The notes below the pieces were generated by a model. It was not told where the DNA came from and ran no database searches. It was given only the letters and a program-made list of their open reading frames with translations. Below, in pieces: positions 24,170 to 59,052 of a stretch of DNA of 64,000 nucleotides (its first letter is position 1; each line of letters begins with the position of its first letter). The DNA is taken from the IMG/VR virus record IMGVR_UViG_3300042289_000986, positions 1 through 64,000 of that record. The stretch is one strand, 5' to 3'. Position numbers and translations under genes: made by a program.

Positions 24170-24724
24170 ATGCATAAATTTGATACTGTTATTAATGAAT
24201 TTTTGGGTAGTTTGGCATCTGCTGCTGGTTCGGCTTTAAAAGCCGCTGAAGACCCATCATTCTTGGGACAAACTATTAAAAACTATCAAACAGAAAAAGG
24301 AAAAAAAGAAGGTCAACCATACGGTGTAAACAATCAACCAAAACCTGGTGACATTGCCATTTATCAACAAAACCCAGAAGTTACCGCACACATTGATACA
24401 AAGGTTGCTACTGCCCCATATAAAAAAGAAAATGTAGAATTTTTAGAAGGACAGTTTCAAGTTACATTGATGACACCTGATCGTAAAACTTCACCATATT
24501 CTTTTGTTAAAACAGAAAACAATCCTGATTGGCGAATAGAAAAAGATGAAATCATTCGACGTAACGAAAGTGCTCCTCCGAAAAAACAAGATTTTGTTTT
24601 AACTGAAACTGACCCCAGAACACAAAGACCAGTTCGTCAACAGTTTAAGACAATGGTCGTTGGTAAAAGTACCAAGTTTCCAAATTGGTCAAGTTATAAA
24701 GCTTACGTTAAATCACAAAAATAG
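24170..24724 (+). CDS. Hypothetical protein, possible internal head protein
   Basis: MHKFDTVINEFL N-terminus; TAAATA upstream. Confidence 0.55.
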   Translation: MHKFDTVINEFLGSLASAAGSALKAAEDPSFLGQTIKNYQTEKGKKEGQPYGVNNQPKPGDIAIYQQNPEVTAHIDTKVATAPYKKENVEFLEGQFQVTLMTPDRKTSPYSFVKTENNPDWRIEKDEIIRRNESAPPKKQDFVLTETDPRTQRPVRQQFKTMVVGKSTKFPNWSSYKAYVKSQK

Positions 24725-24757
24725 TTGATTTTTAACTTCACTATAATAAATTAAAAT

Positions 24758-24958
24758 ATGCATTCACAAATCGTTAAAATTTCTTTCGATAAACCAATCT
24801 TTGATTTTTCTAGAAGAGAAAAATTTGTTAATACTCAAATTCAAAAAAACATAGATTTGTTTAATCATAACGGATTTATTGTTTTAGAGCATAATATCTT
24901 AACTAAAAATGATTCTTATGCTTCCGTTGAATTTAAACTTAAAAGAATGGTAGGTTAA
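24758..24958 (+). CDS. Hypothetical protein
   Basis: Short ORF with an upstream promoter-like sequence. Confidence 0.5.
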   Translation: MHSQIVKISFDKPIFDFSRREKFVNTQIQKNIDLFNHNGFIVLEHNILTKNDSYASVEFKLKRMVG

Positions 24959-26043
24959 TTTTTGCGCCATATCCACAAAGGCTCAACAAATATTCCTTCT
25001 TTGTGAGATTTGCTATTAATTCTTTTAGCCATCCTATAGTTTAAATTTTCTTCTTTGCTTGAATTTGGGAGACTAGATATAAAATCATTCATAGGATCGC
25101 ATATACGATTGATGGTATGATTACAATACACATCACTAATATTGATTGCCAGTATACCGTTAGGTTTTAATTTATTCCAACAATCATTTAAAGTTTTAAA
25201 TAAAAACTTTTCGAGCCACACATCAATTTTTTTATATCTTTTCCAACTTTGATTTTCTTCTTGTGTGTATCTTTCAACAATAAAGTATGGTGGACTTGTA
25301 AAAATAGTATCATAGTTACTTTCTAATTTTTCTACAGTTTCTTCCGCAGCACCAACAATCATTTTAATTTCTTTGTTTTGATTGAATGTTTTTATTTGTT
25401 GGTTATATCCTTCAACCAAATTTTGATTTGGATCTATACCAGTATAACTTTTGATATTTTCAGTTACCATCGCACCTGAAAGTCTATCACCCCAACCAGA
25501 ACTAAAATCTAATACATTTTCTGAATTGAATATTTCATATATTGCTTTTGCAGCAGATGGACGAAATTGTGAAGCTATATACTTTCTCATAGCTATACAA
25601 CTTCTTAGAATGTCTGTATTAACTTCTTTTACTTTTAATCCCCACAAAGCATTGCAAAGAGTATAAAAGAATTTTTTTTGTGTCCAATTTCGATATGGTG
25701 ATGGTGAATTAATACAATCACAATGATATCTTAATTCTTGATGAAAATAATTTGATGATTTATTCCCAACATTACATGAGTCTATATACTTGGTTCCCAA
25801 ATCCCACTTGTATTCATATCGAGAAAAAAGACTTGATTCTTTAATTAAGATTTTTGTGTTTAATTCCTTTAGTTTTTCAAAATCTTTCTTGCAATCTTCT
25901 TCAGAAATGTTTACCATAGGCATAGAACAATTTCTTGTTTTATTCCAAATGATTTCTTTTATTTCATCAGACGGTTTTGGATACTTTAAAAGTATATCAG
26001 ACCATTCTGATTCGGTAAAAATTTGCATATACCAATTATCCAC
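24955..26043 (-). CDS. DNA (amino) methyltransferase-like protein
   Basis: VLDFSSGWGDRL SAM-binding motif and FTSPPYF catalytic motif. Confidence 0.8.
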   Translation of the reverse strand: MDNWYMQIFTESEWSDILLKYPKPSDEIKEIIWNKTRNCSMPMVNISEEDCKKDFEKLKELNTKILIKESSLFSRYEYKWDLGTKYIDSCNVGNKSSNYFHQELRYHCDCINSPSPYRNWTQKKFFYTLCNALWGLKVKEVNTDILRSCIAMRKYIASQFRPSAAKAIYEIFNSENVLDFSSGWGDRLSGAMVTENIKSYTGIDPNQNLVEGYNQQIKTFNQNKEIKMIVGAAEETVEKLESNYDTIFTSPPYFIVERYTQEENQSWKRYKKIDVWLEKFLFKTLNDCWNKLKPNGILAINISDVYCNHTINRICDPMNDFISSLPNSSKEENLNYRMAKRINSKSHKEGIFVEPLWIWRKN

Positions 26044-26113
26044 ATAAACAAATGAATGTCAAAGAAATTAAAAAACTATTGACAATTTCTTTGGTATAAA
26101 TAAACTAACAAAC

Positions 26114-26689
26114 ATGCCTAAAAGGAAAAAACGCAAAACACCCGTCAAACGCACCAAGGTTAAATCATACAAATATGAACAACCAGTTCATGTTGAAAAG
26201 AAATATCCTGTAGATCAGTTTGAGGATTTAAAGGGTTGGATGGAATATTATAAACAACATAATAAATTTCCATACAAACAAATTCTTTGTTGTAAATGTC
26301 ACACGGGATTTGCATCGATGAAAGGACTAGGTTGGAAGAAAGCCTTTGAAAGATGTGATGGTGATGCCATGAGAGTTTTAAATGAAACCTATTGCAAAGA
26401 TTGTAGGGAAGTTCAACCAAAAGAAAAGAAAGTAAAAGTTCTTACTAGGGAAGAAATGGAAGCCAGAGCAGAAGAAATTCGTCGCAATCTACCAAAGATA
26501 GATTTACACAAAGAAAGACAAGTTATTGACCTTAGAAAAGACAAAGCAGCTTGTGAGGAACACACACGATTTGCATGTATGCGCCCTGACATTTATCTTG
26601 ACAATGATAAGACTTGCGACTATTGTAGTATAAACAAATGGTGTGCTTGTCCCATCAAAAAGTTTTCAAAACAATATAAAAATAAATGA
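26114..26689 (+). CDS. Basic Cys-rich zinc-binding protein
   Basis: CCKC, CKDC and CDYC...CAC motifs. Confidence 0.6.
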   Translation: MPKRKKRKTPVKRTKVKSYKYEQPVHVEKKYPVDQFEDLKGWMEYYKQHNKFPYKQILCCKCHTGFASMKGLGWKKAFERCDGDAMRVLNETYCKDCREVQPKEKKVKVLTREEMEARAEEIRRNLPKIDLHKERQVIDLRKDKAACEEHTRFACMRPDIYLDNDKTCDYCSINKWCACPIKKFSKQYKNK

Positions 26690-26845
26690 ACATTACTGAA
26701 AAACTGTTGATTATATTGATACTTGTAAGTGCTTTAAATTCTGTTACAATTATTTCATTAGAAAACAAATTAAAAAGTGTGGAGAAAATGGCTTCAGAAT
26801 ATTTTGCGCCCATTCCAGACTACGACATTCAAGGAGAACCCCAAG

Positions 26846-27076
26846 ATGGAAGAACTAAATAAACCAGTAACAAACCCCCAAGGTCCATACAGAATTAAAT
26901 TAACATATAAAGGAATCGATTGTCACATTCAGATGAAAAGCATTAGTGAGTGTGAATTTGATATTCGAGTAAAAACAAAACAAAAAATGACGGAATCTGA
27001 TTTGTTTGGGCTTAAAGAATATTTGGATGCCGAAGGCTTTACTAATGAGGCTAGAAAACATAATCTTATGTGGTAA
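26846..27076 (+). CDS. Hypothetical protein
   Basis: Internal ATG (MEELNK) chosen as start. Confidence 0.5.
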   Translation: MEELNKPVTNPQGPYRIKLTYKGIDCHIQMKSISECEFDIRVKTKQKMTESDLFGLKEYLDAEGFTNEARKHNLMW

Positions 27077-27084: not shown

Positions 27085-27384
27085 ATGAGTGAAAAATGCT
27101 GCCAAAACAAAAAAGACTGTTGTAAGAACCAACCACAACAACAAAACTTAAACGACTATATGAAATTGGGTTTTTCTTTTTGGCTTACGCTAGTTTTTGT
27201 AGGACTAAAACTATTCGGTGCAATTGATTGGTCTTGGTTGTGGGTTCTTTCTCCACTATGGATTGGATACGGCTTTATTTTTGTTTTAATTATGAGCTAT
27301 GTTTTCTTATCAGCTTTGACAAGACAAACCGCAAGACTCAAATTCAAGATTACAAAAAAACAAAAAGAAAAAGCAGAAGATTAA
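27085..27384 (+). CDS. Small membrane protein (IDWSWLWVLSPLW family)
   Basis: LKLFGAIDWSWLWVLSPLW transmembrane motif. Confidence 0.7.
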   Translation: MSEKCCQNKKDCCKNQPQQQNLNDYMKLGFSFWLTLVFVGLKLFGAIDWSWLWVLSPLWIGYGFIFVLIMSYVFLSALTRQTARLKFKITKKQKEKAED

Positions 27385-28760
27385 AGAGCAGCTTCAATAC
27401 CTTGTAAATGATTTTCCCAAGCTCTTTCATGAAGAGCCAAGTATCTTTTCATTTCTCTTTCTTCTAATACAGCTTCTAAATCTTCAGGCATTTCTCTATC
27501 TAAATCTTCGGCCATAATGTTCAGATAATCATTTTTTCTTTCCTTTGACAGCTTAACAAAAGTCTTGGCTGGAATATTATAACCTGCCGAAATGTATTCG
27601 TACTGATCCATTTGACTTAAATTTAAAAACTGCTCTTCCTCAAAATATCTAGCTAATCTTTCTAGCTTTACCATCTTATTTTCTTCTTCATTTGACAATG
27701 GTTTATATTTGAAATATCCTTGTTTTCCTTTTAATTCAGGCATCCAGCTTTCAATCGTTGACCAAGGTTCAGCCGTTCTAGTACCATTTGGCGCGGGAGT
27801 TAAAGCATATTGTCCATCGCGTGTCACACCGATTGCTGTAATAACATATGGGTCATTAGCTACCGCTTCTGATCCTTTGGTTTCTTTAAATCCTGTATTT
27901 CTTTTTTTAGACCATGTGTAATAAAAAGTCCATTTTTGATACGTTCTATAACTCATGAACATATTAGTACCACCCCCAACTATTGACCATGTTGTACACC
28001 AGTTAGCGGGTCTTTTCCCATCTGGTGTTCTTACATCATTCATGTCAATCAATGCATTTCCAATGCTAATAGCTTCATTTGTGTTAGCAACATACCAAAT
28101 TGCAACTTCATCGTCATTGTAAACTGGTTTTTTTGTTATGTTTACTTTGGCTCCAACATCAACCTTATCTTCACTTTCAATGTGTTGATGAAGAAATTCG
28201 GTTAATTCAACATAACTTTTATATTTTGAAACATCTTCCGATCCCTCGATGCCTTGTTCTTTTAATTCGACAAATTGTTCATAAGCATCTACAACATCTT
28301 TTGGTAAAAGAGTTCTTTTTCCATCATTTATCCATTTTGCAACAATAGAAGCTTCTATTTTGGGTGCTGCGGGATCTAATGTCAAAAGTCTATTTGCTTC
28401 TTGTCTGTCGGGTACAAATTTTAAAACTTCGACAGAATTTAAATCACGGATTGTGACTTCAAGTTTTTCCAGACTATCAAACTGGCGGGGAAAATCTTTT
28501 GTCTGAGAATTGTTTTTATTTTTAAATTTTAAAAATTGTTTATATAAAGAAATTAAATAGTTTACATCAGGATTTTGATTAGCAAAAATAACACCCAAAG
28601 CTTGAGCATCGTTCTTTTGTCCTGTTGGATCAATTGCTATGAATTGATTTATTATTTCTTCTGGAACATTTAATGTCTTGAGTTTTTCAACAACATCTTT
28701 GGCCTTTTCAACAACAAGACCATATAAACTTTCCAGTATTATTGTGTCTTTATCTCTCAT
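27381..28760 (-). CDS. Hypothetical protein, putative internal head protein
   Basis: MRDKDTIILESLY propeptide-like N-terminus; internal IDPT/LDPA repeat; NWCTT motif. Confidence 0.6.
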   Translation of the reverse strand: MRDKDTIILESLYGLVVEKAKDVVEKLKTLNVPEEIINQFIAIDPTGQKNDAQALGVIFANQNPDVNYLISLYKQFLKFKNKNNSQTKDFPRQFDSLEKLEVTIRDLNSVEVLKFVPDRQEANRLLTLDPAAPKIEASIVAKWINDGKRTLLPKDVVDAYEQFVELKEQGIEGSEDVSKYKSYVELTEFLHQHIESEDKVDVGAKVNITKKPVYNDDEVAIWYVANTNEAISIGNALIDMNDVRTPDGKRPANWCTTWSIVGGGTNMFMSYRTYQKWTFYYTWSKKRNTGFKETKGSEAVANDPYVITAIGVTRDGQYALTPAPNGTRTAEPWSTIESWMPELKGKQGYFKYKPLSNEEENKMVKLERLARYFEEEQFLNLSQMDQYEYISAGYNIPAKTFVKLSKERKNDYLNIMAEDLDREMPEDLEAVLEEREMKRYLALHERAWENHLQGIEAAL

Positions 28761-29947
28761 TCTTGATCTTTATATTGTTCTTCTTTTTCTTCTCCAGTTT
28801 CAGGATCTAAATTAAATTCTTGACTCATTTCATCAATAATTTCTTTTACAATTTCTCTGGCTCTTGGTCCATTTGTTTCAATTTCTCTTAAATCATCGAT
28901 AGGAAGACGCATCAATTGTTGATAGATATAATATTTGTGTTTAACAAAAGGTGCAGGAATTAAATCTAGAATTCTTTTAAGTTGAGCTTGAGCAAATCTT
29001 ACAGTTCTTGTTTCGTCTTCAAGGCTTGCTGTTTGTTCTGCTCCTCTCAATTCGTCCATCATAGAAATATATTGCATGATACCTTTTATGATTTCATGAA
29101 TAAGAAAACTGAATGTTATGCCTCTGGCTTTGATTACATATTTTCCTTCACCTTCTTCACCGCGACCACTTTCAGGCATTGCTTGTGCGCTACCCAATGC
29201 AGCTTCAGGGTTTTGTGCTGCTTGTCCTGCAAATTCAGTTGGTGTAGCATAATATAAAACCTGAACAATTGATGAGATTACACCATACATATCAGCAATT
29301 TCTGTACTCATTTGATTGAGTTCATCACGAACCAAATTGTATGAATATAAATGGTTGAAAGCTTCTCCAAATTTTAAAACATCGGCAAATTTTTTTCTTT
29401 GTTTGATTTCTTCTTCACCCATAATTTCCATTGCAAGAGCAATGTTTGTTTTTTCTTGATCAGTCAAGTCTTCACTTTCAAGAGTAGAATCTTCTTCTTC
29501 TTGTCTCATTTCTTCTTCTCTTGTTTGAGCTTCTAAATCTGTAATAGCATCTTCCAATTCTGCTCCATCAATTTTGGCATCAATTTTTAAAACACCATCA
29601 TTGATTGCTTCTTTAATTGGTTTCATTTCATCCAGATCCAAAACCAATTTCACTGCTAATTCTTCAAGTCTTGGTTTGTTTTGACTTTCAATTTGTTTTA
29701 TTCTTTGTAAAAGTCTAACAACTGTTTCTGTAATAGGATAATTTCCAAGTTGTTCCACATCGACGTTTGCATAGTTAGCCAAACGATCCAAGATCTTTTC
29801 ATAATTTTGAGAATAAAGCATGTGCTTGTAATCCTCAACAGTTTGATCTTGAGCTAAATTACTGGGATGATAATATTTTTTTGGATATCTTTCTCCAATT
29901 TCAATATCTTCCAATAACCCATTTATTTTATTATTGTAAAATTTCAT
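28757..29947 (-). CDS. Acidic hypothetical protein (ARGITFSFLIHEIIKG motif)
   Basis: Long ORF in an operon with ATGA overlaps. Confidence 0.6.
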   Translation of the reverse strand: MKFYNNKINGLLEDIEIGERYPKKYYHPSNLAQDQTVEDYKHMLYSQNYEKILDRLANYANVDVEQLGNYPITETVVRLLQRIKQIESQNKPRLEELAVKLVLDLDEMKPIKEAINDGVLKIDAKIDGAELEDAITDLEAQTREEEMRQEEEDSTLESEDLTDQEKTNIALAMEIMGEEEIKQRKKFADVLKFGEAFNHLYSYNLVRDELNQMSTEIADMYGVISSIVQVLYYATPTEFAGQAAQNPEAALGSAQAMPESGRGEEGEGKYVIKARGITFSFLIHEIIKGIMQYISMMDELRGAEQTASLEDETRTVRFAQAQLKRILDLIPAPFVKHKYYIYQQLMRLPIDDLREIETNGPRAREIVKEIIDEMSQEFNLDPETGEEKEEQYKDQE

Positions 29948-30159
29948 GATAATCCGTGACGTTTGTTAAATGCTTCAATCTCTCTTTGTTTTCTATTTTT
30001 ACGAGCATCTGGATTTGGTTGGTGACCTGGTTTTGGTCTGCGGAATGGAGCCTTGCTTGGTTTTGTATCAGGCTTGGTTGTTGGTTTTGTATCAGGCTTG
30101 GTTGGCGTTTCGACAGGTTGTTCTTCCAAAATACGTAAAATGATTTTTTTCAGATTCAT
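29944..30159 (-). CDS. Small Pro/Lys-rich protein (TKP repeats)
   Basis: PTKPDTKPTTKPDTKP; TAAATA upstream. Confidence 0.6.
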   Translation of the reverse strand: MNLKKIILRILEEQPVETPTKPDTKPTTKPDTKPSKAPFRRPKPGHQPNPDARKNRKQREIEAFNKRHGLS

Positions 30160-30220
30160 ATAAGATATTTAGTGTTTTAAATGTCAAAATAAGTATAAGT
30201 ATCTTGTAAATATAAAAGAT

Positions 30221-31561
30221 ATGAAATTCGATACTTTGGCTAAAAAGATTTATTTGGAAGCAAGAGGACCAGATGAACCCGAAAGAGAATTGCCAGAACG
30301 AGCAACCGCTACAGGAGAATTTAACATTGGTGCGGCTGGAGCCAGAAATATTACATTCCTTCCAAAAAAATCATCACCAGAAGAAGTTGCGGTTTCTAGA
30401 GGACGCAGTAGAGAAGTAGGTACTGATTTTAAATTGGATCAAGGTAAAAAAATTACACTTACAGGAGATTTAGATAAAAGAAAATCTATTTTATACGGGG
30501 TTGCTGCTGGTGAAGCCTTTAAAAGATTAAAAGCCCAAGATTTTACACCCAAAACCACACACGAAGCAGAATCCGTCAGAGAATTTATGGAGCGCGGTAT
30601 GGACGAAAAACTCGCAGATGCTCAATATTTAATGGGAAGAGTTTTTAGAAATCTTATCAGTCTTTATGATTTAGATCAAAAAGGAGGTGAAGGTGCTGTA
30701 AAAGCAGAGAAAAAAATAAAAATTTTATCAGATGAAGGAGACGTATTAACCGTCACTACAATTCCTTTATTGGCAAAAGAAACATTAAAATTATTTAAAG
30801 ATGGAATTGCCAAAGATTTAATAGAAAATCATGGCTTATCCAAAGCATTTTTAATCGATCAAAATAATATCTTATCGCCAGTTCCTCCCAGAGGAAATCA
30901 AGAAACGCCTAGTCTTTTAAGTATTCGTTTAGGTTGGAAACGTTTAATAGCAGGATTAATTCAACTCACAGGAACAAAAGGAAAAGAATTTGTTAAATGG
31001 AGTAGAACAACAAGACAAGAACAACCAAAAATCAATCTTCTTGCTTTGGATTATCGTTCAACTCCTACCAATTGGATTATTCATACTATTAAAAGAGTTA
31101 AAGATCCAGAAAAAGGAGCATATCTGCGACAACTTCATAAAACAGAAGGTGATAAACCAAGTCCTCGTTTAAAAACAGATTGGCCAAGTGAAAACGAAGG
31201 AATAAATCTTCTTCCATTAAAATTTGTTGATGGTGTTCCACAATATGGTATTCAATTAACTGAAAAAGAAATGAAACTTTCATCAGTGGCAGAAACTTTA
31301 GAATTAGTTGGTTATGATACTATTTGGGATGTTATATATGCTTGGAATAAAGGCGATGCCACATTCCAAATTCCAAATACAAACAAAACAATTAATTTAA
31401 AAAATTTAAATATTTCTAGATATAGATTATCAGAACCACCAAAGGAAAAACGTAAAACTGTAGAAAAAATTGCAAAGAATGTTGTAAGACCAGAATACAG
31501 ACCGCTTCCAAAAGATTCCGATAATCAATTAGATTTAGACTTTAACCCAGAAAAAAAATGA
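30221..31561 (+). CDS. Hypothetical protein, putative internal head protein
   Basis: MKFDTLAKKIYLE N-terminus; TAAATA upstream. Confidence 0.6.
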   Translation: MKFDTLAKKIYLEARGPDEPERELPERATATGEFNIGAAGARNITFLPKKSSPEEVAVSRGRSREVGTDFKLDQGKKITLTGDLDKRKSILYGVAAGEAFKRLKAQDFTPKTTHEAESVREFMERGMDEKLADAQYLMGRVFRNLISLYDLDQKGGEGAVKAEKKIKILSDEGDVLTVTTIPLLAKETLKLFKDGIAKDLIENHGLSKAFLIDQNNILSPVPPRGNQETPSLLSIRLGWKRLIAGLIQLTGTKGKEFVKWSRTTRQEQPKINLLALDYRSTPTNWIIHTIKRVKDPEKGAYLRQLHKTEGDKPSPRLKTDWPSENEGINLLPLKFVDGVPQYGIQLTEKEMKLSSVAETLELVGYDTIWDVIYAWNKGDATFQIPNTNKTINLKNLNISRYRLSEPPKEKRKTVEKIAKNVVRPEYRPLPKDSDNQLDLDFNPEKK

Positions 31562-31923
31562 AATCAAAAGACCAAATCAAACTAGAATCTCTTTATGAAC
31601 AAGTTGTAAATGAATTGTTTACAGGTATGGGCATATCTGAATTGAAACCAAAATTAGAAGATGCTGGTTATGTTTATGATCAAGAATCCGACACGTTTAA
31701 ATCTCCTGTCAGTAATCAATCTTTGAGTTTTTCTGATGCAGTTAAAGAATATGAAGAAAAAGGACAATCTGATGAAGAATCTTCAGAACAATCCTCAGAA
31801 GAAGAATTAGATACACCAATTGAAAAGAAAGCAGATGCAATGCTTTCTCAAGGCGCACCACAAGATGGTATGTCAGATCAACAAGTCAAAGTGATTGAAG
31901 ATCTTTTAGACGAAAAAAATTAA
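31558..31923 (+). CDS. Acidic hypothetical protein
   Basis: MKSKDQIKLESLY N-terminus. Confidence 0.6.
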   Translation: MKSKDQIKLESLYEQVVNELFTGMGISELKPKLEDAGYVYDQESDTFKSPVSNQSLSFSDAVKEYEEKGQSDEESSEQSSEEELDTPIEKKADAMLSQGAPQDGMSDQQVKVIEDLLDEKN

Positions 31924-32783: not shown

Positions 32784-32784
32784 A

Positions 32785-33882: not shown

Positions 33883-34278
33883 ATGAGAACCCATGACGAA
33901 AAATTGATGGAAGGTGCATATCGTAAAATATATGTAAAAGAAAATGTTTCCAGTATACAAGAACCCATTCTTATTTGGCTTACTAAAAGAATCGGAAGCA
34001 ATGCACAACAAGACAATGAATATCGTCCTTTGCTTTTGAAACTTTTAAAAAAATTAATTAGTAAAGAACAAAAAAGAAAAGTCAGCAAAAATTCTTCTCC
34101 TATTGCTGCTGGTATTCCTGTAAAAATTTCTACAGCCCAAGTTCCAATCACACCTGATTCATTTCCAAAAGCATCACTTAAAAAAGAATCGTTTGAAAAT
34201 CTTCTCAAAGAATCTTTGACACCTGATGAACTTGAAGAACTTTTTACGGATAGTGAAGAGTCAGAGTCGGTTCAATAA
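33883..34278 (+). CDS. Hypothetical protein
   Basis: MRTHDEKLMEGAY N-terminus; TAAATA upstream. Confidence 0.55.
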   Translation: MRTHDEKLMEGAYRKIYVKENVSSIQEPILIWLTKRIGSNAQQDNEYRPLLLKLLKKLISKEQKRKVSKNSSPIAAGIPVKISTAQVPITPDSFPKASLKKESFENLLKESLTPDELEELFTDSEESESVQ

Positions 34279-34654: not shown

Positions 34655-35875
34655 ATGCGATCAAAGGATCAAATCATTTTGGAAGAAATTTATACAAGAG
34701 AAATCTTGAATGAAAAAAGAAAAGAAAGACTTCTTCCCATGTTTAACAAGATTATTCAAAAGTTTGCCGATCTTCCTGAAGGGTTTCCTCTTCAATACCA
34801 AGAGTCCTCGATAAAATCTGAATTTGGTGCAAAAGATAAAACCGAAGAAGAATACAAGAAAGAAATTAAAGAATACAACATTGAAGAACTAACTTTTGAT
34901 TTTCAACAGTTAATAAAAAATGTTTCTGTTTTGGCAAAAAAAGAAAACTTGGTCATGATAATTTTGAAAAAAGTGGTTTTAGATATGGAAACAATGTGGA
35001 AAGACATGGAAAGATATGGGGTGGTTTTTGATAGACAATTGGATGAAGATGGACAAGAAATGACAAGTTCCAAAGAAGAGTATGAAGACTATTTAAAAAG
35101 AATTCCTCGTTCAATTTCAACGTCCATACAACACTGGCTTTCTTTACCCATACCAAAACTGCAAACTTATTTAAAAAATGTCAGTCCCAATGAACAATGG
35201 TATGTGGTGGCTCGAACTGTGGATGAAATGGAAAACGAATGGAAACAAAGTGCAGGTCAATGGATTGATGTCACCGATGATATGAAGAAAGGAAACATCA
35301 AAGAGTTTATAAATTTTGGAAACATGGGTTGGTTTACTTTAATGCGTCCCTATTGTGAACAAGAAGGAAAAGCAATGGGTCACTGTGGTAACAAAGGAGC
35401 ATTTGCACACACCGATACTGTTTTGTCATTACGAGAAATGAAAAAACAAAAAGATGGAATTCTTTTGGCCAAACCTTATTTGACTTTTATTTTACAGTCA
35501 GGAGAATTTTTAGGAGAAATGAAAGGTAGAGGAAACCAAAAACCACAAGAAAAATACCACCCTTATATTCTGAGTCTTTTGACTCACAAAGAAAATGGCA
35601 AGTATCTAATCAAAGACATCGAAGGAGGTGGTTATCTTCCAGAAAAAAACTTTGATATTGAAGATTTTTCCTATGAAAACCTTGTCAAGCTGACCAACGA
35701 AAGACCATATATGGTGGCAAAAAGAATAAGAAATTATGAATCATTTTATTTAACAGATAAAAAAGAAGTTCCAGAAAAAATGATCAAGGCAGTGATGGCA
35801 AGTAAAAATAAAGATAAGGTTTTATTGGACGTTCCCCAAGCCCAAAGAGAAAAAATATTTCCTCCGACTACCTAA
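34655..35875 (+). CDS. Hypothetical protein with PcfJ-like motif
   Basis: EGKAMGHCG and EMKGRGNQKP; MRSKDQIILEEIY N-terminus. Confidence 0.6.
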   Translation: MRSKDQIILEEIYTREILNEKRKERLLPMFNKIIQKFADLPEGFPLQYQESSIKSEFGAKDKTEEEYKKEIKEYNIEELTFDFQQLIKNVSVLAKKENLVMIILKKVVLDMETMWKDMERYGVVFDRQLDEDGQEMTSSKEEYEDYLKRIPRSISTSIQHWLSLPIPKLQTYLKNVSPNEQWYVVARTVDEMENEWKQSAGQWIDVTDDMKKGNIKEFINFGNMGWFTLMRPYCEQEGKAMGHCGNKGAFAHTDTVLSLREMKKQKDGILLAKPYLTFILQSGEFLGEMKGRGNQKPQEKYHPYILSLLTHKENGKYLIKDIEGGGYLPEKNFDIEDFSYENLVKLTNERPYMVAKRIRNYESFYLTDKKEVPEKMIKAVMASKNKDKVLLDVPQAQREKIFPPTT

Positions 35876-51162: not shown

Positions 51163-51171
51163 TTGCGCGTT

Positions 51172-51813: not shown

Positions 51814-51833
51814 CGAATAGAAAATCCCTTCTC

Positions 51834-52278: not shown

Positions 52279-52305
52279 AATGCAACATGGTGTCGCATAC
52301 CCGCA
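52263..52305 (+). repeat. 43-bp repeat, copy 2
   Basis: Matches 48957-48999. Confidence 0.9.
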
Positions 52306-52385
52306 GGTGACGCATATACGTATACGCGCACACGCGATTAGATAATCCAGAAACTTATTTTCTTGTAAGCGAAAAATTAAATAAA

Positions 52386-52697: not shown

Positions 52698-52718
52698 TAG
52701 ATAGGTGTGTTGTGTGTT

Positions 52719-52753
52719 GGGGTGGTGGTTGAAAAACCATCACCCCTTTTTTT
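52719..52753 (+). terminator. Rho-independent terminator
   Basis: GGGGTGGTGG/CCATCACCCC plus T-tract. Confidence 0.85.
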
Positions 52754-53064
52754 GTAGTTGAATATCAATAGGTTATATCCAATAACCTATATTTAATAAC
52801 CCAAACTCATTAGGATGTGAGAATTGGGAAACTTATTTTCTTGTTTGATCTTCTCCTCGCCAGGAATTCCGCGACATCTGATAAAACAAAATCGTCTTCT
52901 TCGCCTGGACAATTTTCAGGATCAAAAGAAAGCATGAATCTTATTTTCTTGTAGAGTGTTCCCACGGGAAAAAAATCCGTTGCATCGGCTGTGCCTTCTG
53001 CTATTGTTGGCCTTGTCGAAAGACACAAACACAAACAAACAACCAAACAAAATAGACAAAAGTT

Positions 53065-53607
53065 ATGGCTAACATCAAAATCAATGCCCTCGATATCTTG
53101 AGGGAATCCACCACGAACGGATGCAAATTCATCTCGTTCCTCTACATGACCAAAGGCACGGGCGAAACCTCGCGTTACACGCTTAACTTTGGTATCGACT
53201 ACAAGGCAGCTTGCGAAGCGGACAAAATCGCTCTGGAAGCCTATCAGCCGAGCAACGACATTGAAGCCGAAGCCAAGGGGCAAATGCTTCAGTCGCTCAC
53301 CGAAACGCTCACCCAAGGCGTGAGCAGCAGCTACACGCAAAAAGATACGTTCGATAACATCGGCAAAGGTATTCGCCAACACAAGGAAACTGGTGAAATC
53401 TACCTCTACGGATTCGTCCAACAAAAGGAGCAAGTTGCTCCTCCGACAAATCCGAAGAAGCCTGTCAACAGCCGTCCTCTGACTCTGGCAAAGCGTGACA
53501 TTGAAAAGGCTCTGGAGTTTAAGCGCAACAAATTCGGTCAATTCATCCTTACCCCCGAAAACATCGCAGGTGTTAAGGTCTGCGGCGATCTGATCGAATT
53601 GCACTAA
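53065..53607 (+). CDS. Hypothetical protein
   Basis: Single-gene cassette with strong codon bias. Confidence 0.7.
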   Translation: MANIKINALDILRESTTNGCKFISFLYMTKGTGETSRYTLNFGIDYKAACEADKIALEAYQPSNDIEAEAKGQMLQSLTETLTQGVSSSYTQKDTFDNIGKGIRQHKETGEIYLYGFVQQKEQVAPPTNPKKPVNSRPLTLAKRDIEKALEFKRNKFGQFILTPENIAGVKVCGDLIELH

Positions 53608-53624
53608 ACCCTCCCGCTCAAACC

Positions 53625-53654
53625 AACCCGCTCCCGAAAGGGGGCGGGTTTTTT
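53625..53654 (+). terminator. Rho-independent terminator
   Basis: CCCGCTCCC-GAAA-GGGGGCGGG plus T-tract. Confidence 0.9.
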
Positions 53655-53802
53655 GTTTGAGTTACACTTTCTCTCTGTCCGAAATCATTTGGTTCGATTC
53701 CACCTCTCAAAAGAAAGCATGAATCTTATTTTCTTGTAGACTCGAACCTCCCGTAAAAAATTCCTTTTCCCTCGATCAGTCCCATCTACACTCGCAGACG
53801 TT

Positions 53803-54174
53803 ATGACTAATTCAATTCCATCCACACTCAAGCTGGAAGATATTCAAGGTATCGCAGACTTGACGGCAAAGTTTCTCAACCTGTCGATTCGTCCTCGCGC
53901 AATCATCAAGGACACTCGCAACGGCAAAGCTTACACCCACAAGGGTTGGTTCTCTCTGCCAAAATGGGCTTGGAATCGTGGGGATCGTTACGTCACCTAC
54001 TACGTTGTCCATGAGGTTTGTCACTTCTATGCAGGTGGCATTGATCATGGAACCCTGTTCAAGAAGGTAGAGGACAAGGCTCTTGCTTACTGGGGAATCT
54101 ACATCAAACGAAACAAAGTATACCCCAAGAAAATCTTCAATGGGCCTTGTCAAAACGACCCGATTGATTGCTGA
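53803..54174 (+). CDS. SprT/YgjP-like zinc metalloprotease
   Basis: VVHEVCH...HG..F motif. Confidence 0.7.
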   Translation: MTNSIPSTLKLEDIQGIADLTAKFLNLSIRPRAIIKDTRNGKAYTHKGWFSLPKWAWNRGDRYVTYYVVHEVCHFYAGGIDHGTLFKKVEDKALAYWGIYIKRNKVYPKKIFNGPCQNDPIDC

Positions 54175-54196
54175 CAAGTCTGGTGTTGTTGTGATC

Positions 54197-54228
54197 AACC
54201 CATCGTCCGAAAGGGCGGTGGGTTTTTT
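54197..54228 (+). terminator. Rho-independent terminator
   Basis: CCCATCGTCC-GAAA-GGGCGGTGGG plus T-tract. Confidence 0.85.
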
Positions 54229-54368
54229 CTTTCATACCAACACACACACATCAAACACAGATTTCACGGGCACACAAAAAAGGATGAATCTTATTTTCTT
54301 GTAGAGTGTCCCCAACGGGCAAAAAACTTCTTCCCTTCCTGACCATTCCACATACACTCATCCTCGTT

Positions 54369-54776
54369 ATGGGAACACGACTATATCCAATCACCAACGA
54401 CCACAGCATCCTTGAGGCACTCGCAGAAGTGCCAAAGGGAACAATGGAGCGTCTCACGAAGATGCAAGCCAACCACAAGGAACTCCTCGATGCCGCCCGT
54501 TCGCGTGGCGAGGGTATCTACGATCTGGAGCACGAACTCTGGTGCGAGATCAACGACAATCCCGACATGGGGCCAATGGACAACTTCCACACTTTCGGGT
54601 GGGGCAAGCTCCGTAGTGGAGTCTACGAACTCCTTGAGGCCAACCCCGACAAGTGGGAAGGCGAAACCTACAGCGGCTCCTGCACGGACGCAGACCTCTG
54701 TGCCCAAATGCTCTTGGCGCAAGGGGTGGTTACCTCCGTCTCACCAAGCGATATCGGCGGCTTGGCTTGGGGCTAA
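54369..54776 (+). CDS. Hypothetical protein
   Basis: Single-gene cassette. Confidence 0.65.
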   Translation: MGTRLYPITNDHSILEALAEVPKGTMERLTKMQANHKELLDAARSRGEGIYDLEHELWCEINDNPDMGPMDNFHTFGWGKLRSGVYELLEANPDKWEGETYSGSCTDADLCAQMLLAQGVVTSVSPSDIGGLAWG

Positions 54777-54794
54777 ACCAACCCAACTCACACG

Positions 54795-54826
54795 AACCCT
54801 CACGGAGAAATCCGTGGGGGTTTTTT
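54795..54826 (+). terminator. Rho-independent terminator
   Basis: CCCTCACGGA-GAAA-TCCGTGGGGG plus T-tract. Confidence 0.85.
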
Positions 54827-54964
54827 CTTTCCCTGATCGAACCTCGAAGCAGATCCTGAACTTCGAGCATCAAAAGAATTGAAGAATCTTATTTTCTTGT
54901 TGTTTCGAGATTCAGGAAAAAAGTCCTTCCCATCCTGATCGAACCAACTATAGTGATTATCGTT

Positions 54965-55255
54965 ATGAGAAAAAACACCACACCCGATATGCTGAACCCC
55001 AACACCATCCTGTTCAACATCGCATCCCGCACCTGTATGAAGCTCTCTCCCAAAAAGGAGGAGAGGGTTCTTGGTTACATCTATAACGTCATGAACGGTG
55101 ACGGACTCTACGACAATGCCAGCAAGGAGGTAATCCTTGAGGCATACATTGACCAAGAGAGCGGTGGTCGCCCAGACGTAACATGGGCGCACCTCATCGC
55201 TGAAGCCTTGGACGATATCCAAGGCACAGGCGTCCTCCAAGAATTCCGCCTGTAG
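54965..55255 (+). CDS. Hypothetical protein
   Basis: Single-gene cassette. Confidence 0.6.
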   Translation: MRKNTTPDMLNPNTILFNIASRTCMKLSPKKEERVLGYIYNVMNGDGLYDNASKEVILEAYIDQESGGRPDVTWAHLIAEALDDIQGTGVLQEFRL

Positions 55256-55273
55256 CCTTCAACCACTCACAAG

Positions 55274-55305
55274 ACCCATCGCTCGAAAGGGCGGTGGGTT
55301 TTTTT
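55274..55305 (+). terminator. Rho-independent terminator
   Basis: Near-copy of the 54197 terminator. Confidence 0.85.
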
Positions 55306-55433
55306 GTGCCTACACCACAGGACCACCTGCAACCCAGAACAAAAGAAAGAGTGAATCATATTTTCTTGTAAAGTATCCCCACCAGAAAAAAACCTTTGAC
55401 CCCTGATCGTTTCTATCTATACTCATCATCGTT

Positions 55434-55658
55434 ATGAGAAACCAAAACATCACACCAAGCACATCAGTTTCTGATCTCATTCATATGATGGCAAACGCAG
55501 CCACCACCGGAGCAACCTGTGGAGGTCACACCAAGTCCCGAATGAACTGGAAGTTCTTCGAGGAATACAAGGAGGAACTTGAAAACTCTGGGGGAGTTGC
55601 TCCTTCGATGGACGAACTCTACGACCTCGGAATCTTCAACGGAAAGGGGGCATGGTAA
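55434..55658 (+). CDS. Hypothetical protein
   Basis: Behind TTGACC-N16-TATACT. Confidence 0.6.
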   Translation: MRNQNITPSTSVSDLIHMMANAATTGATCGGHTKSRMNWKFFEEYKEELENSGGVAPSMDELYDLGIFNGKGAW

Positions 55659-55855
55659 TGAGAGCCACCGAATTCAGATGCAAGGGTCACCATTTCCGTG
55701 TGGAAGAATCCTTCTGTGGTGATACCCCAAACAATAACGTCTGGGTATTGAACAGAGCAAAGACCAACTGGGATTGGAAGCTGCTCACCAACTACGACTA
55801 CGATCATCTTGTTCGTAGACTCAAACGAGTAGGCATCGACTACTTCAAAGACTGA
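55658..55855 (+). CDS. Hypothetical protein
   Basis: TAATG overlap. Confidence 0.55.
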   Translation: MRATEFRCKGHHFRVEESFCGDTPNNNVWVLNRAKTNWDWKLLTNYDYDHLVRRLKRVGIDYFKD

Positions 55856-55876
55856 TCATCTTCAACCTCCGATCAC

Positions 55877-55908
55877 AACCCACTGCTGGCAACGGCAGTG
55901 GGTTTTTT
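55877..55908 (+). terminator. Rho-independent terminator
   Basis: CCCACTGCTG-GCAA-CGGCAGTGGG plus T-tract. Confidence 0.85.
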
Positions 55909-56111
55909 CTTTCCCACATCTGTCCAGCCCGTCACCTGCGCTCACAAGAAAATATGATTCATCTCTTCTTGTTGTCCCAGTTGAACAGTGGTTCTAACCC
56001 ACCCACCAGTTCTTATGACAACCAAAGGTTCCCATCAGTAGAACAATCTATTCTTTATGACACTCGCGGCGGTTGTCCACCAACCACTCATCATCTATCA
56101 TTGATACTGTT

Positions 56112-57706: not shown

Positions 57707-57758
57707 ATTATTTAATATACCAAAAAATTTTCTAAAAGCAATATAAATAATAAGGCGA

Positions 57759-58157
57759 ATGAACTTTTCCGATTTTGTCAGTAAAAAGTATGAGGGTGCC
57801 GGGTTTTTATTTTTGACACCAGACAATCAAACCTTGTTACTACAAAAGCATAACAAGAAATGGAGTTTGGTTGGAGGTCATTCGGAAAAAGGAGAAACTC
57901 CTTATCAAACAGCCCAAAGAGAATGTAAGGAAGAGATTGGTTTTCTTCCCAAGGGGGAAGTTGTGAACATGATCAAATATACAAAAAGAGAGACAAAGGG
58001 TTCTTGTTTCTCATTCATCATGAGAATTTCGGAACCCTTTGTCCCTAGTTTATCTTTCGAACACGCTGATTATAAATGGATACCCCTTAAAAGGATGTCC
58101 GAATATAATTTATCAAAGGCTGTTCGTGACCTATACCCTCTTCTTAAGAAGAATTAG
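57759..58157 (+). CDS. Nudix hydrolase
   Basis: GGHSEKGETPYQTAQRECKEEIG Nudix box; TATAAATA upstream. Confidence 0.9.
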   Translation: MNFSDFVSKKYEGAGFLFLTPDNQTLLLQKHNKKWSLVGGHSEKGETPYQTAQRECKEEIGFLPKGEVVNMIKYTKRETKGSCFSFIMRISEPFVPSLSFEHADYKWIPLKRMSEYNLSKAVRDLYPLLKKN

Positions 58158-58351
58158 GCTTGGTCTTGGGAAACAACTGGAGCAGCAGCTTGTTCAGCAG
58201 GAACCTTAACCACATCGATGTGGGAGAAGGTTCTGTTGCCTTGGTGAACAACTACAGGGAGCAAGGTGACACCGTGTTCCTTGAGGACTGCTTCGATTGC
58301 TTCTTTGGCAGCTTTGATTTCGTTTTCGAGTTGGTTGTTTTCTGTACTCAT
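58154..58351 (-). CDS. Small hypothetical protein
   Basis: ORF behind a TTGACA promoter on the minus strand. Confidence 0.55.
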   Translation of the reverse strand: MSTENNQLENEIKAAKEAIEAVLKEHGVTLLPVVVHQGNRTFSHIDVVKVPAEQAAAPVVSQDQA

Positions 58352-58419
58352 AGAGTAATAAATTTACACTAAATTATATATTTGTCAAACATTTATTTTA
58401 GGGTAAATATAAAATACAC

Positions 58420-58578
58420 ATGAAAAAAATTTCCTTTAAAGAATATCTTTTGGAAAAGAAGAAAAGAAAAAAGAAATATAAGAGTAAAAAAAGGGGAACC
58501 TATATGGTTGGACCAATTGGCTTTTATCATACTTTTCCATCGGAAACCAATGCAGGAGATGGGTCAGGAGTAAATTAA
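58420..58578 (+). CDS. Small basic protein (MKKISFKEYLLE)
   Basis: 52-aa Lys-rich ORF; TAAATA upstream. Confidence 0.55.
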   Translation: MKKISFKEYLLEKKKRKKKYKSKKRGTYMVGPIGFYHTFPSETNAGDGSGVN

Positions 58579-58581
58579 TAT

Positions 58582-59052
58582 ATGAGAAACAAAGATGCAA
58601 TGTTATTGGAAACCTGTTACAACAAGGTCAAAGGATTGGTCAAAGAAGGAGTTGAAGACATGGAATTTATTTCTCCTGTTGATGTCGATTATATCGATAC
58701 CGATAGCCAAGAAGTAAAAGATCTTTCCCATCTCAATGTTCAAAATGACAGCATTGTGATTGACAAAAAAAATGATGAAGTAACCATCAAATACAAGATT
58801 GAAATAGAATACCGCAAATACGGCATTAAGAATATGTATGCCTATGGTTTTAAACTCTTGCCTTTCAAGTTCACGGTAATGGACGAAGAGTTCGAAGAAA
58901 AGGTAATCAAAGAAATGCCTGAAACAGATTTATCAGATGCCCAATTTGAAACATCACATCTGGAAGGTAAACAATTTTATCCCACAAGTATAAAACTTTT
59001 CGTGGATAAAGATTTGAATATCGTTCCAGAAAAGTGTATTGTAGAATTTTAA
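58582..59052 (+). CDS. Hypothetical protein, putative internal head protein
   Basis: MRNKDAMLLETCY N-terminus. Confidence 0.6.
   Translation: MRNKDAMLLETCYNKVKGLVKEGVEDMEFISPVDVDYIDTDSQEVKDLSHLNVQNDSIVIDKKNDEVTIKYKIEIEYRKYGIKNMYAYGFKLLPFKFTVMDEEFEEKVIKEMPETDLSDAQFETSHLEGKQFYPTSIKLFVDKDLNIVPEKCIVEF

What the first reader, a model, noticed from the sequence alone, without database searches (positions are those of the whole stretch)
24170..59052. Shared N-terminal propeptide on unrelated late proteins: a putative injected-protein address code
Seen, class 1 M[RK]x[KH]Dxxx[LM]ExxY: MRDKDTIILESLY (28760-), MKSKDQIKLESLY (31558), MRTHDEKLMEGAY (33883), MRSKDQIILEEIY (34655), MRNKDAMLLETCY (58582), each followed by VVE/VNE/VKE/LNE. 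Class 2: MKFDTLAKKIYLE (30221), MHKFDTVINE (24170), MKFYNNKINGLLE (29947-), MNLKKIILRILEE (30159-), MKKISFKEYLLE (58420) and MNFSDFVSKKYE (Nudix). Most follow TAAATA or lie in operons that do. Known: T4 internal proteins have a short capsid-targeting sequence cleaved after Glu by gp21. Inference: about ten packaged, co-injected effectors, possibly including the factor that binds the 29-bp palindrome.
Basis: partly seen in the sequence, partly recalled or inferred. Interest (0 to 1): 0.7.

Follow-up and report, generated by a model that had tools for sequence, protein, structure and literature searches.

The report
Shared capsid-address leader on phage proteins
A lake-water relative of phage T4 puts the same 20-residue N-terminal tag on many unrelated late proteins; it most likely addresses them into the phage head and is then cut off, so the tag would flag proteins that travel with the DNA into the host.

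Summary
Class 1 is real and far beyond chance. M[RK]xKDxxxLExxY sits at Met1 of all five named window ORFs. The 211.6-kb genome, a complete uncultivated T4-like lake phage, has 3 more strict copies, 1 weak hit and 3 divergent ones, and none is internal.

The tag is widespread. It heads 116 non-redundant cargo N-termini in viral contigs and 305 clusters among 1.84 billion proteins, and 144 of the best 150 matches start at residue 1. Conservation is at protein level and stops at residue about 20. LLE ends at residue 10, and a second [LIVM]xE ends at 18-20 in 70%; T4 internal-protein propeptides have these motifs at residues 10 and 19.

The genome encodes a T4-type prohead protease with the GELNHP and GVSSR motifs, where T4 gp21's catalytic His and Ser lie. 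Most tagged genes follow TAAATA-type late boxes. In two cargo families the Glu ending the leader is invariant, and distant orthologues carry other leaders, some T4-like 10-mers, ending at that same Glu.

Class 2 is heterogeneous. A refined M-x(0-3)-[KNH]FD...[LI]xE class is supported; the rest is loose.

Best reading: a capsid-targeting, protease-cleaved propeptide. Packaging, cleavage and injection remain untested.

The parts
27381..28760 (-). Class-1 gene, 459 aa. Leader MRDKDTIILESLYGLVVE is encoded at 28707-28760. Third gene of the leftward late operon.
   Evidence: E18 is invariant in 13 orthologues. The cargo model has pLDDT 77.7 and no fold match.
31558..31923 (+). Class-1 gene, 121 aa, acidic. 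Leader MKSKDQIKLESLYEQVVNE is encoded at 31558-31614. Its ATG overlaps the stop of the 30221 gene.
   Evidence: The G005 orthologue MKNKDQIFLESLYNKVIQE sits at the same position.
33883..34278 (+). Class-1 gene, 131 aa. Leader MRTHDEKLMEGAYRKIYVKE is encoded at 33883-33942. It is the most divergent window copy.
   Evidence: GATAAATA box at 33864-33869.
34655..35875 (+). Class-1 gene, 406 aa. Leader MRSKDQIILEEIYTREILNE is encoded at 34655-34714. Cargo has a PcfJ-like fold.
   Evidence: At least 1000 homologues; E20 is invariant in a 50-sequence alignment; distant orthologues carry other leaders that end at the same Glu. Model pLDDT 86.7; PcfJ-like phage proteins match at E 1.5e-6.
58582..59052 (+). 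Class-1 gene, 156 aa. Leader MRNKDAMLLETCYNKVKGLVKE is encoded at 58582-58647.
   Evidence: Homologous to a 159-aa class-1 protein of L006 (E 3e-12). Variant box AGTAAATT at 58571-58576.
24170..24724 (+). Class-2 gene, 184 aa. The 10-residue leader MHKFDTVINE (24170-24199) resembles the T4 CTS.
   Evidence: The G003 orthologue starts MIVNFDAKVDQILNE and the homology begins right after that Glu. T4 ipII and ipIII start MKTYQEFIAE. Box at 24158-24163.
30221..31561 (+). Class-2 gene, 446 aa. Leader MKFDTLAKKIYLE (30221-30259) is followed by Ala.
   Evidence: Orthologues keep M[KN]F[DN]...[LIVF]xE followed by Ala: MNFDKLIKKYITE, MKFDKFINQYISE, MNFNKLAKKIYFE. Box TGTAAATA at 30207-30212.
28757..29947 (-). 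Class-2 gene, 396 aa, acidic. Leader MKFYNNKINGLLE is encoded at 29909-29947.
   Evidence: The G005 orthologue starts MKFDKVLKKINE, and the conserved I[ED]IGE core begins 1-2 residues after the Glu.
29944..30159 (-). Small basic, Pro-rich protein, 71 aa. N-terminus MNLKKIILRILEE (30121-30159). First gene of the leftward late operon. Only loosely leader-like.
   Evidence: The G005 orthologue MNLENFILKVLEE is followed by the same QPVETPTKP. Box ACTAAATA at 30166-30171.
58420..58578 (+). Small basic protein, 52 aa. N-terminus MKKISFKEYLLE (58420-58455) is followed by a Lys/Arg tract. It is the positional counterpart of small basic proteins that carry the class-1 leader in relatives.
   Evidence: Same build (leader, then poly-K/R, then Gly/aromatic, then acidic tail) as P0063 and the L006/L091 67-aa protein, and the same place just upstream of the 156/159-aa class-1 gene. 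BLAST itself is not significant. Box at 58404-58409.
57759..58157 (+). N-terminus MNFSDFVSKKYE. Doubtful member: it has no [LIVMF]xE.
   Evidence: TATAAATA box at 57744-57749.
30160..30220 (.). Divergent late-promoter region between the two leader-gene operons.
   Evidence: Boxes at 30166-30171 (leftward) and 30207-30212 (rightward).

Best explanation
The class-1 leader, M[KR]xKDQILLExxYxx[IV]Lx(x)E, is an N-terminal amphipathic helix of about 20 residues. I read it as a capsid-targeting propeptide, the functional equivalent of the T4 internal-protein CTS.

Proposed mechanism:
1. The tagged genes are transcribed late.
2. The helix docks the cargo onto the scaffolding core (the gp22 homologue) of the assembling prohead.
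3. The phage's T4-type S77 prohead protease cuts after Glu in [LIV]xE, at residue 10 and/or 18-20.
4. This leaves the mature cargo free inside the head, from where much of it probably leaves with the DNA at infection.

A second, shorter leader, M-x(0-3)-[KN]FD...[LI]xE followed by Ala, is closer to the T4 CTS and does the same job for other proteins.

Shown here: the tag, its strictly N-terminal place, its sharp end at a Glu, its attachment to hundreds of unrelated cargos, the late-type boxes, and the co-occurring protease.
Inferred, not shown: docking, cleavage, packaging and injection.
For: 1. Position. All 8 strong profile hits in the genome are at Met1. 174 of 176 pattern hits in viral contigs start ORFs of at least 40 aa. 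144 of the best 150 hits among 1.84 billion proteins start at residue 1, and at least four of the other six have a Met at the leader start behind a mis-called upstream start. 305 clusters reach E <= 1e-3.

2. A sharp module boundary. Information content falls to background after residue about 20. LLE ends at residue 10 in 109 of 116. A second [LIVM]xE ends at 18, 19 or 20 in 81 of 116, against a background of 1.4% per position. T4 ipII and ipIII have IAE at 8-10, ipII has KLE at 17-19, and ipI has ITE at 17-19. T4 IP propeptides are 10-19 residues long and are cut at L/I-X-E by gp21 (PMC9026906).

3. Orthologue evidence. E20 is invariant among 50 homologues of the 34655 protein at 28-84% identity. 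E18 is invariant in the 28760 family. In 60 of 65 distinct N-termini of the 34655 family a [LIVMF]xE precedes the first conserved core motif, by 1-7 residues in 55 of them. This holds whether the leader is class 1, a degenerate class 1, or a T4-like 10-mer such as MKLFEVYLTE, MKVFEVSLFE or MRARDFLIE.

4. The machinery is present. The genome has a PF03420 protease (E 3e-29) with GELNHP and GVSSR, a gp22-like scaffold gene and a gp23 major capsid protein. All 5 complete genomes of about 200 kb that carry the leader have the protease and 2-7 leader genes each; the reversed-pattern control gave 0. The clade's capsid protein is conserved up to WC[IL][EN]E at about residue 60 and is variable after it, as expected of a gp21-type site. 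The protease N-terminus keeps Y.LLVE with E10 invariant.

5. Late expression signal. TAA[AG]TA lies within 30 nt upstream of 85 of 136 unique leaders, peaking 12-14 nt before the ATG. 21% of all ORFs in the related loci have this box, and 19% of genes in the own genome have TAAATA within 40 nt. The same box precedes head genes.

6. Modular cargo. Pfam finds GNAT, PolyA_pol nucleotidyltransferase, HD, PARP, GP88, RHS and DUF5661 among 105 cargos, and nothing for most. The window's own GP88 copy lacks the leader. The cargos of 34655 and 28760 are unrelated (hhalign probability 0.3%). 263 of 266 cargos have no membrane-like segment.
Against: There is no proteomic or experimental datum. Cleavage and packaging rest on analogy.

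Conservation continues past the first LLE site, with Y13 invariant and [IV]16 and L17 strongly conserved. The T4 10-residue CTS does not need this. It could mean that the helix is part of a mature, uncut interaction module.

30% of members lack a [LIVM]xE at 18-20, for example the 101396 family.

Class 1 has no sequence similarity to the T4 CTS, and no cultured phage carries it. The closest cultured capsid protein is only about 35% identical.

61% of cargos are net acidic, whereas the T4 IPs are described as basic (PMC9026906).
Confidence: 0.62

Rival explanations
1. The leader is an uncut interaction helix. It lets many late proteins bind one common partner that has nothing to do with the capsid, for example the sliding clamp (Q-I-L-L-E-x-A-Y loosely resembles a PIP box, Qxx[LIM]xx[FY][FY]), RNA polymerase or a host factor.
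For: The helix is amphipathic and its conservation runs through both putative cut sites: K4, D5 and Y13 are invariant. The AlphaFold model of the 34655 protein shows one continuous helix over residues 4-38. A half-leader occurs at the C-terminus of distant orthologues of the 30221 protein.
Against: The tag is strictly at Met1 in hundreds of families, which a portable binding motif does not need. Q6 is present in only 72%, and the first aromatic of a PIP box is A, L or I. This reading explains neither the invariant Glu at the module boundary nor the replacement of the leader by T4-type 10-mers that end at the same Glu in orthologues. To my knowledge, T4 clamp-binding motifs are C-terminal.
Confidence: 0.14
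2. Late promoter plus leader is chiefly a mobile recombination cassette. The shared 5' sequence lets cargo genes be shuffled or duplicated, as proposed for promoter/stem-loop cassettes in T4-type genomes. On this view the peptide has little function of its own.
For: There are tandem arrays of up to 8 leader genes (L042) and 5 (L064). A leader-like remnant sits at the 3' end of the gene upstream of a class-1 gene in G005. The box-to-ATG distance is stereotyped.
Against: Synonymous sites vary freely while the residues stay fixed. The peptide is kept across 305 clusters from many samples. Conservation stops at a Glu, not at a nucleotide boundary. Shuffling may well happen as well, but it does not explain selection on the peptide.
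Confidence: 0.07
3. The proteins are diverged paralogues of one ancestral protein, and the N-terminus is simply its best conserved part.
For: Several members are short, acidic, low-complexity proteins for which homology cannot be excluded.
Against: The cargos include unrelated Pfam folds: GNAT, nucleotidyltransferase, HD, PARP, GP88. Profile-profile comparison of two cargo families gives probability 0.3%. Cargo lengths run from 54 to 774 aa. The same cargo family occurs with other leaders or with none.
Confidence: 0.05
4. The leader does target proteins to the prohead, but the cargos are assembly or core components that are degraded or stay in the head. They would then not be injected effectors.
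For: T4 gp67, gp68 and gp22 are core proteins processed by the same protease (PMC9026906). Many cargos here are short and acidic, like gp67 and gp68. Class-2-like leaders sit on small genes beside the head module, at 192747-193070(-) and 194610-195131(-) of the genome.
Against: Enzyme domains among the cargos (GNAT, PARP-like, nucleotidyltransferase, HD, PcfJ-like) and the high turnover of cargos between related genomes fit effectors better than conserved assembly parts.
Confidence: 0.1

Closest known systems
Capsid targeting sequence (CTS) of phage T4 internal proteins IPI, IPII and IPIII, removed by the gp21 prohead protease
   Same: Both are N-terminal, 10-19 residues long, and end in [L/I]xE at residues 10 and/or about 19. 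Both are shared by otherwise unrelated proteins. In both cases the genome has an S77 protease, a gp22-type scaffold, a gp23-type capsid protein and TATAAATA-type late promoters. The literature describes the T-even IPs as a diverse set of proteins with only a conserved CTS (PMC3012670).
   Different: Class 1 has no sequence similarity to MKTYQEFIAE. It is conserved over about 20 residues, including an invariant Tyr after the first putative cut site. It is carried by hundreds of cargo clusters and by 9-12 genes per genome, and it coexists with a second, more T4-like leader class. The T4 CTS has been shown by experiment; this one has not.
Propeptides of head and ejection proteins of giant phages (phiKZ, 201phi2-1, SPN3US), cut at S/A-X-E by gp175-type proteases
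   Same: Many head-internal proteins are processed after Glu by a diverged relative of T4 gp21, and many of them are ejected into the host (PMC9026906).
   Different: PMC9026906 reports few cleavage determinants beyond the Glu motif and describes no shared leader sequence. Here the leader is a sharply defined sequence family.
N-terminal packaging signal of DarB in phage P1
   Same: An N-terminal stretch of up to 30 residues is enough to send a reporter protein into the capsid, and the cargo is an anti-restriction protein delivered with the DNA (PMC9024508).
   Different: The P1 Dar proteins share no consensus N-terminus (same paper). Whether the DarB signal is cut off was not checked. Here one consensus is shared by all cargos.
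Cargo-loading peptides of encapsulins, and MuF-domain fusions of phage toxins (from my own knowledge, not tested here)
   Same: A short portable address, or an adaptor domain, attaches diverse cargos to the inside of an HK97-fold shell.
   Different: Encapsulin tags are mostly C-terminal and are not cut. MuF is a whole domain. Neither depends on a prohead protease.

Membership tests
T4-type capsid targeting propeptide (CTS) | Located at the extreme N-terminus, starting at Met1 | tested here: met
   all 8 strong genome hits, 174 of 176 contig hits, and 144 of the best 150 database hits are at residue 1.
T4-type capsid targeting propeptide (CTS) | Short (10-19 residues) and ending in the gp21 motif L/I-X-E | tested here: met
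   LLE ends at residue 10 in 109 of 116. [LIVM]xE ends at 18-20 in 81 of 116, against 1.4% per position. The boundary Glu is invariant in two orthologue families.
T4-type capsid targeting propeptide (CTS) | The genome encodes a gp21-type (S77) prohead protease and a gp22/gp23-type head module | tested here: met
   Also 5 of 5 complete relatives that carry the leader.
T4-type capsid targeting propeptide (CTS) | Shared by proteins that are otherwise unrelated | tested here: met
T4-type capsid targeting propeptide (CTS) | Sequence similarity to the T4 CTS MKTYQEFIAE | tested here: not met
   Class 1 shares only the length and the terminal [LI]xE. Class 2 (MHKFDTVINE, MKFD...LxE followed by Ala) resembles it in pattern: an aromatic at residue 3-4, a hydrophobic residue at 7-8, and Glu then Ala at the end. 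That similarity carries no statistical weight.
T4-type capsid targeting propeptide (CTS) | Sufficient to package a reporter, and removed by the protease in the prohead | not testable with these tools
   Needs virion proteomics or reporter fusions. The complex prediction gave no answer.
T4-type capsid targeting propeptide (CTS) | Late expression | tested here: inconclusive
   Late-type boxes lie upstream of most members, and the same box precedes head genes. No transcript data were examined.
PIP-box / clamp-binding motif | Qxx[LIM]xx[FY][FY] | tested here: not met
   Q6 is present in 72%, L9 in 99%, position +6 is A/L/I and not aromatic, Y13 in 100%.
Sec/Tat signal peptide or membrane anchor | Hydrophobic core of at least 10-15 residues after a short charged N-region | tested here: not met
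   The leader is amphipathic and charged. Only 3 of 266 members have any membrane-like window, and none of those lies in the leader.
PcfJ-like proteins (cargo of the 34655 gene only) | Structural similarity to PcfJ-like phage and plasmid proteins | tested here: inconclusive
   Foldseek against viral models: PcfJ-like proteins at E 1.5e-6 and 6.6e-5, with TM 0.2-0.3. AlphaFold DB clusters: E about 3e-3. Pfam finds nothing.

The most novel reading that the evidence does not exclude
A sequence-defined, portable head-address tag marks several hundred unrelated cargo families in a widespread freshwater T4-like clade. That would be the largest known repertoire of phage-packaged, co-injected proteins, and it could be read straight from metagenomes. 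The two coexisting tag classes, with the class-1 core occasionally at a C-terminus, might sort cargo to different sites, copy numbers or release times inside the head.
Probability: 0.4. Interest if true: 0.8.

Novelty: new variant of a known kind. Interest (0 to 1): 0.68.

Why it matters
If the tag is a capsid address, a 20-residue profile is enough to list, from sequence alone, the proteins that an entire uncultivated phage clade carries into its host at the first moment of infection. In T4 and P1 this class of protein holds anti-restriction and host-takeover factors. Most of the cargos here have no known family, and those that do look like modifying enzymes: GNAT, PARP-like, nucleotidyltransferase, HD and PcfJ-like. 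They are therefore a ready-made candidate list for new counter-defence functions. The tag also offers a second, natural and well-conserved handle for studying how prohead cores recognise cargo. It shows that the T4 CTS principle extends far beyond the T-even phages.

Tried and rejected
- Complex prediction of scaffold + protease + leader: no answer (score 0.00). It is evidence neither for nor against binding.
- tblastn of a 24-residue leader against 50,697 cultured-phage records: no match at E <= 10. megablast of window 27381-35875: none.
- Pfam and PHROGs on the ten named proteins: nothing above threshold. PHROGs on 105 cargos: few hits, mostly unnamed families.
- Fold searches for the 28760 protein and the Atlas search for the 58582 protein: no usable match.
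- Weak MYST/HAT1-like PDB hits for the 34655 model (E 7e-3, TM about 0.2): not accepted as a fold assignment.
- Generic N-terminal [LIVM]xE as the definition of class 2: not enriched, so replaced by the [KNH]FD pattern.
- BLAST between the 58420 protein and P0063: not significant because of low complexity. That link rests on protein build and gene order only.
- Full-text search for the leader peptide (KDQILLE and variants) in 8.4 million papers: no hit. Topic searches found only T4, P1 and giant-phage CTS work.
- Quick scan for a recurrent 29-bp palindrome in the window: nothing recurrent. Not pursued.
- Neighbourhood of a distant homologue (L132): only a tandem paralogue with another short Glu-ended leader, and no wider leader family could be seen in 21 kb.

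Full report
WHAT THE WINDOW IS
The window is the first 64 kb of a 211,587-bp viral contig with direct terminal repeats. The contig is 32% G+C and is rated complete. It is a T4-type phage. It has a PF03420 prohead protease at 189352-190023 (E 3e-29) that is 32% identical to T4 gp21 and keeps the GELNHP and GVSSR motifs. It has a gp22-like helical scaffold gene at 190279-191175, and a gp23 capsid protein at 191214-192671 (Pfam E 1e-92; 27% identical to T4). No cultured phage is close: the best capsid match is about 35% identical, to marine cyanomyoviruses. The DNA recurs in at least 20 lake-water metagenome runs.

THE OBSERVATION, CLASS 1
A profile built from them finds 8 copies in the six-frame translation of the genome, at E 7e-9 to 4e-6. 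Every one starts at the first Met of an ORF and none is internal. The ninth hit, MAKKDQTSLEKLY, is N-terminal too. Three further divergent copies turned up by eye: MNRKDLNMLSEAYENEILKE at 82700(-), MRKDDISINEAYLKV at 73229(+), and the half-leader MNDPLANAYLKILEE at 101947(+).

Beyond residue 22 the proteins are unrelated. Synonymous codons differ freely between copies, so selection acts on the peptide.

HOW WIDESPREAD IT IS
174 of the 176 matches start ORFs of at least 40 aa.
- After removing redundancy there are 116 different cargo sequences, 54 to 774 aa long.
- There are tandem runs of up to eight tagged genes, in L042.
- A 30-column profile searched against 1.84 billion representative proteins gave 305 clusters at E <= 1e-3. 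144 of the best 150 matches begin at residue 1. At least four of the other six have a Met at the leader start behind a mis-called upstream start.
- Neither the cultured-phage collection nor the searchable literature contains the motif.

ANATOMY OF THE TAG
Per-column information is high from M1 to about residue 17-20 and at background from residue 21 onward. K4, D5, E10 and Y13 are fixed; the scan pattern itself required all four, so their constancy in this set is partly built in. Positions the pattern left free are also conserved: Q6 72%, L8 81%, A/L/I at 12, I/V at 16 81%, L/I/V at 17.

LLE ends at residue 10 in 109 of 116. A second [LIVM]xE ends at residue 18, 19 or 20 in 81 of 116, against a per-position background of 1.4%.

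T4's own leaders, read from the T4 record, have the same layout. ipII and ipIII start MKTYQEFIAE followed by Ala. ipII has a second KLE at 17-19. ipI ends its leader with ITE at 17-19. The review PMC9026906 states that IP propeptides are 10-19 residues long, that they target the proteins to the core, and that gp21 removes them at L/I-X-E.

ORTHOLOGUE EVIDENCE (the strongest argument)
The cargo of the 34655 gene belongs to a family with at least 1000 members. In a 50-sequence alignment at 28-84% identity, the Glu that ends the leader (E20) is an invariant column, although the rest of the leader is not conserved.

Listing the N-termini shows a series of leaders:
- class 1: MRSKDQILLENIY..ILNE
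- variant class 1: MRDNDSLILEGAYLEVLEE
- degenerate forms: MLRSQENLILGSLYYDIIEE
- unrelated leaders: MEYNLQKLCEQRLLEE, MKYKDFYEDLLVE
- T4-like 10-mers: MKLFEVYLTE, MKVFEVSLFE, MRARDFLIE

In 60 of 65 distinct N-termini a [LIVMF]xE precedes the first conserved core motif (RY..MF or NY..MF), by 1-7 residues in 55 of them. So the class-1 leader occupies exactly the slot that a T4-type CTS occupies in orthologues. The 28760 family likewise has an invariant E18.

CONTEXT
- All five complete genomes of about 200 kb that carry the leader also carry the S77 protease, with 2-7 leader genes each. The reversed-pattern control gave zero.
- In six genomes of the clade the capsid protein is conserved up to WC[IL][EN]E at about residue 60 and is variable and Gly/Ser-rich after it. 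This is the expected picture of a gp21-type maturation site, and T4's site is at Glu65.
- The protease itself starts with an invariant Y.LLVE (E10), like the LIE-9 site noted for T4 gp21.
- TAA[AG]TA lies within 30 nt upstream of 85 of 136 unique leaders, peaking 12-14 nt before the ATG. 21% of all ORFs in the related loci have this box, and 19% of genes in the own genome have TAAATA within 40 nt. The same box precedes head-module genes.
- In the window the boxes are at 33864, 34642, 58571, 24158, 30207, 30166, 58404 and 57744.

CARGO
Pfam recognises few of the 105 cargos tested: GP88 (3), GNAT acetyltransferases (2), a PolyA_pol-type nucleotidyltransferase, HD, PARP, DUF5661 and RHS. PHROGs adds little.
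- The 34655 cargo models well (pLDDT 86.7) and resembles PcfJ-like phage proteins (E 1.5e-6, low TM).
- The 28760 cargo has no match, and the two are unrelated.
- The window's own GP88 homologue (51172-51813) has no leader, while a relative has leader plus GP88.
- Only 3 of 266 cargos have a membrane-like segment.

CLASS 2
A narrower pattern is.
- M-x(0-3)-[KNH]FD at residues 2-5 occurs 27 times in 2,230 unique ORFs of related loci, against 4.4 expected.
- 24 of the 27 are followed by [LIVMF]xE within 14 residues, against 30 of 105 internal cases.
- 20 of the 27 have late-type boxes.

This pattern was chosen after the fact, but orthologues back it:
- 30221 has MKFDTLAKKIYLE, against MNFDKLIKKYITE, MKFDKFINQYISE and MNFNKLAKKIYFE, each followed by Ala.
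- 29947(-) has MKFYNNKINGLLE, against MKFDKVLKKINE.
- 24170 has MHKFDTVINE, against MIVNFDAKVDQILNE.
In each case homology of the mature part begins right after the Glu.

The 52-aa protein at 58420 (MKKISFKEYLLE, then a poly-K/R tract) has the build and the gene position of small basic proteins that carry the class-1 leader in relatives. It lies just upstream of the homologous 156/159-aa class-1 gene. This suggests the leaders are interchangeable, but the link rests on build and gene order only.

The 30159(-) protein and the Nudix gene are weak candidates.

VERDICT
Five of its defining features were tested and met. Sequence similarity to the T4 CTS is not met for class 1. The functional features cannot be tested here.

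I therefore describe it as working like a T4 CTS and as a new sequence variant of that kind. Packaging, cleavage and injection are inferred. The complex prediction gave no answer. The link to a palindrome-binding factor is unsupported.

Noticed in passing
window 34642-34657; 24158-24172; 30166-30159(-); general: The TAAATA-type box usually starts only 11-14 nt before the ATG, and no Shine-Dalgarno sequence fits between them. If transcription starts a few bases after the box, as in T4, many late mRNAs of this clade would have almost no 5' leader.
   Followed up: partly
L125:1495-2820 (+) C-terminus; P0291 and P0292 C-termini: Distant orthologues of the 30221 protein end in a copy of the class-1 core: ESLEAAYDQVLIKE, ESLENVYGKLLVESTK, ESLETVYEKVILTESNQ. 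The window copy does not. This could be a C-terminal address, or a remnant of recombination with the class-1 gene that follows.
   Followed up: partly
L042:3158-9200 (-); L064:8652-11993 (-): There are tandem arrays of eight (L042) and five (L064) consecutive genes that all start with the class-1 leader. This recalls the hypervariable internal-protein loci of the T-even phages.
   Followed up: partly
L088:74-247 (+); P0021, P0040, P0049, P0119: Several class-1 cargos are tiny, extremely Cys-rich, metallothionein-like peptides, with up to 12 Cys in 58 aa.
   Followed up: no
window 40000-56000: This block has a higher G+C content (42-46%, against about 30% on either side). It holds five tRNA genes (Arg, Lys, Met, Arg, Cys), many short ORFs, a 671-aa protein with a weak HATPase_c_3 hit, and a GP88-family gene without a leader. 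No leader genes and few late boxes lie here.
   Followed up: partly
window 31920-32783 (-) and 32785-33720 (-): Two adjacent genes (287 and 311 aa) share nearly the same N-terminus, MAKLNRI...KSNKPENLKGIV.RGY.YDYA. They are a tandem duplicate pair, with a late-type box ahead of the upstream copy. Neither matches a known family.
   Followed up: no
G004:C1:147021-148568 (-), locus L122: In one relative the prohead protease match is split into two parts about 1.1 kb apart inside a single open frame of about 600 aa. This suggests an intein or a large inserted domain in the protease gene.
   Followed up: no
window 29944-30159 (-): This 71-aa protein is very basic and Pro-rich, with TKPDTKP repeats. 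It is the first gene of a late operon whose other two genes carry leaders, and may be a DNA-associated internal peptide.
   Followed up: no
L132:8088-11710: In an unrelated 86-kb phage contig the PcfJ-like cargo family occurs as two tandem paralogues. Each has its own short Glu-ended leader: MLISEMIELLE and MKVFEVSLFE, both followed by Ala.
   Followed up: partly
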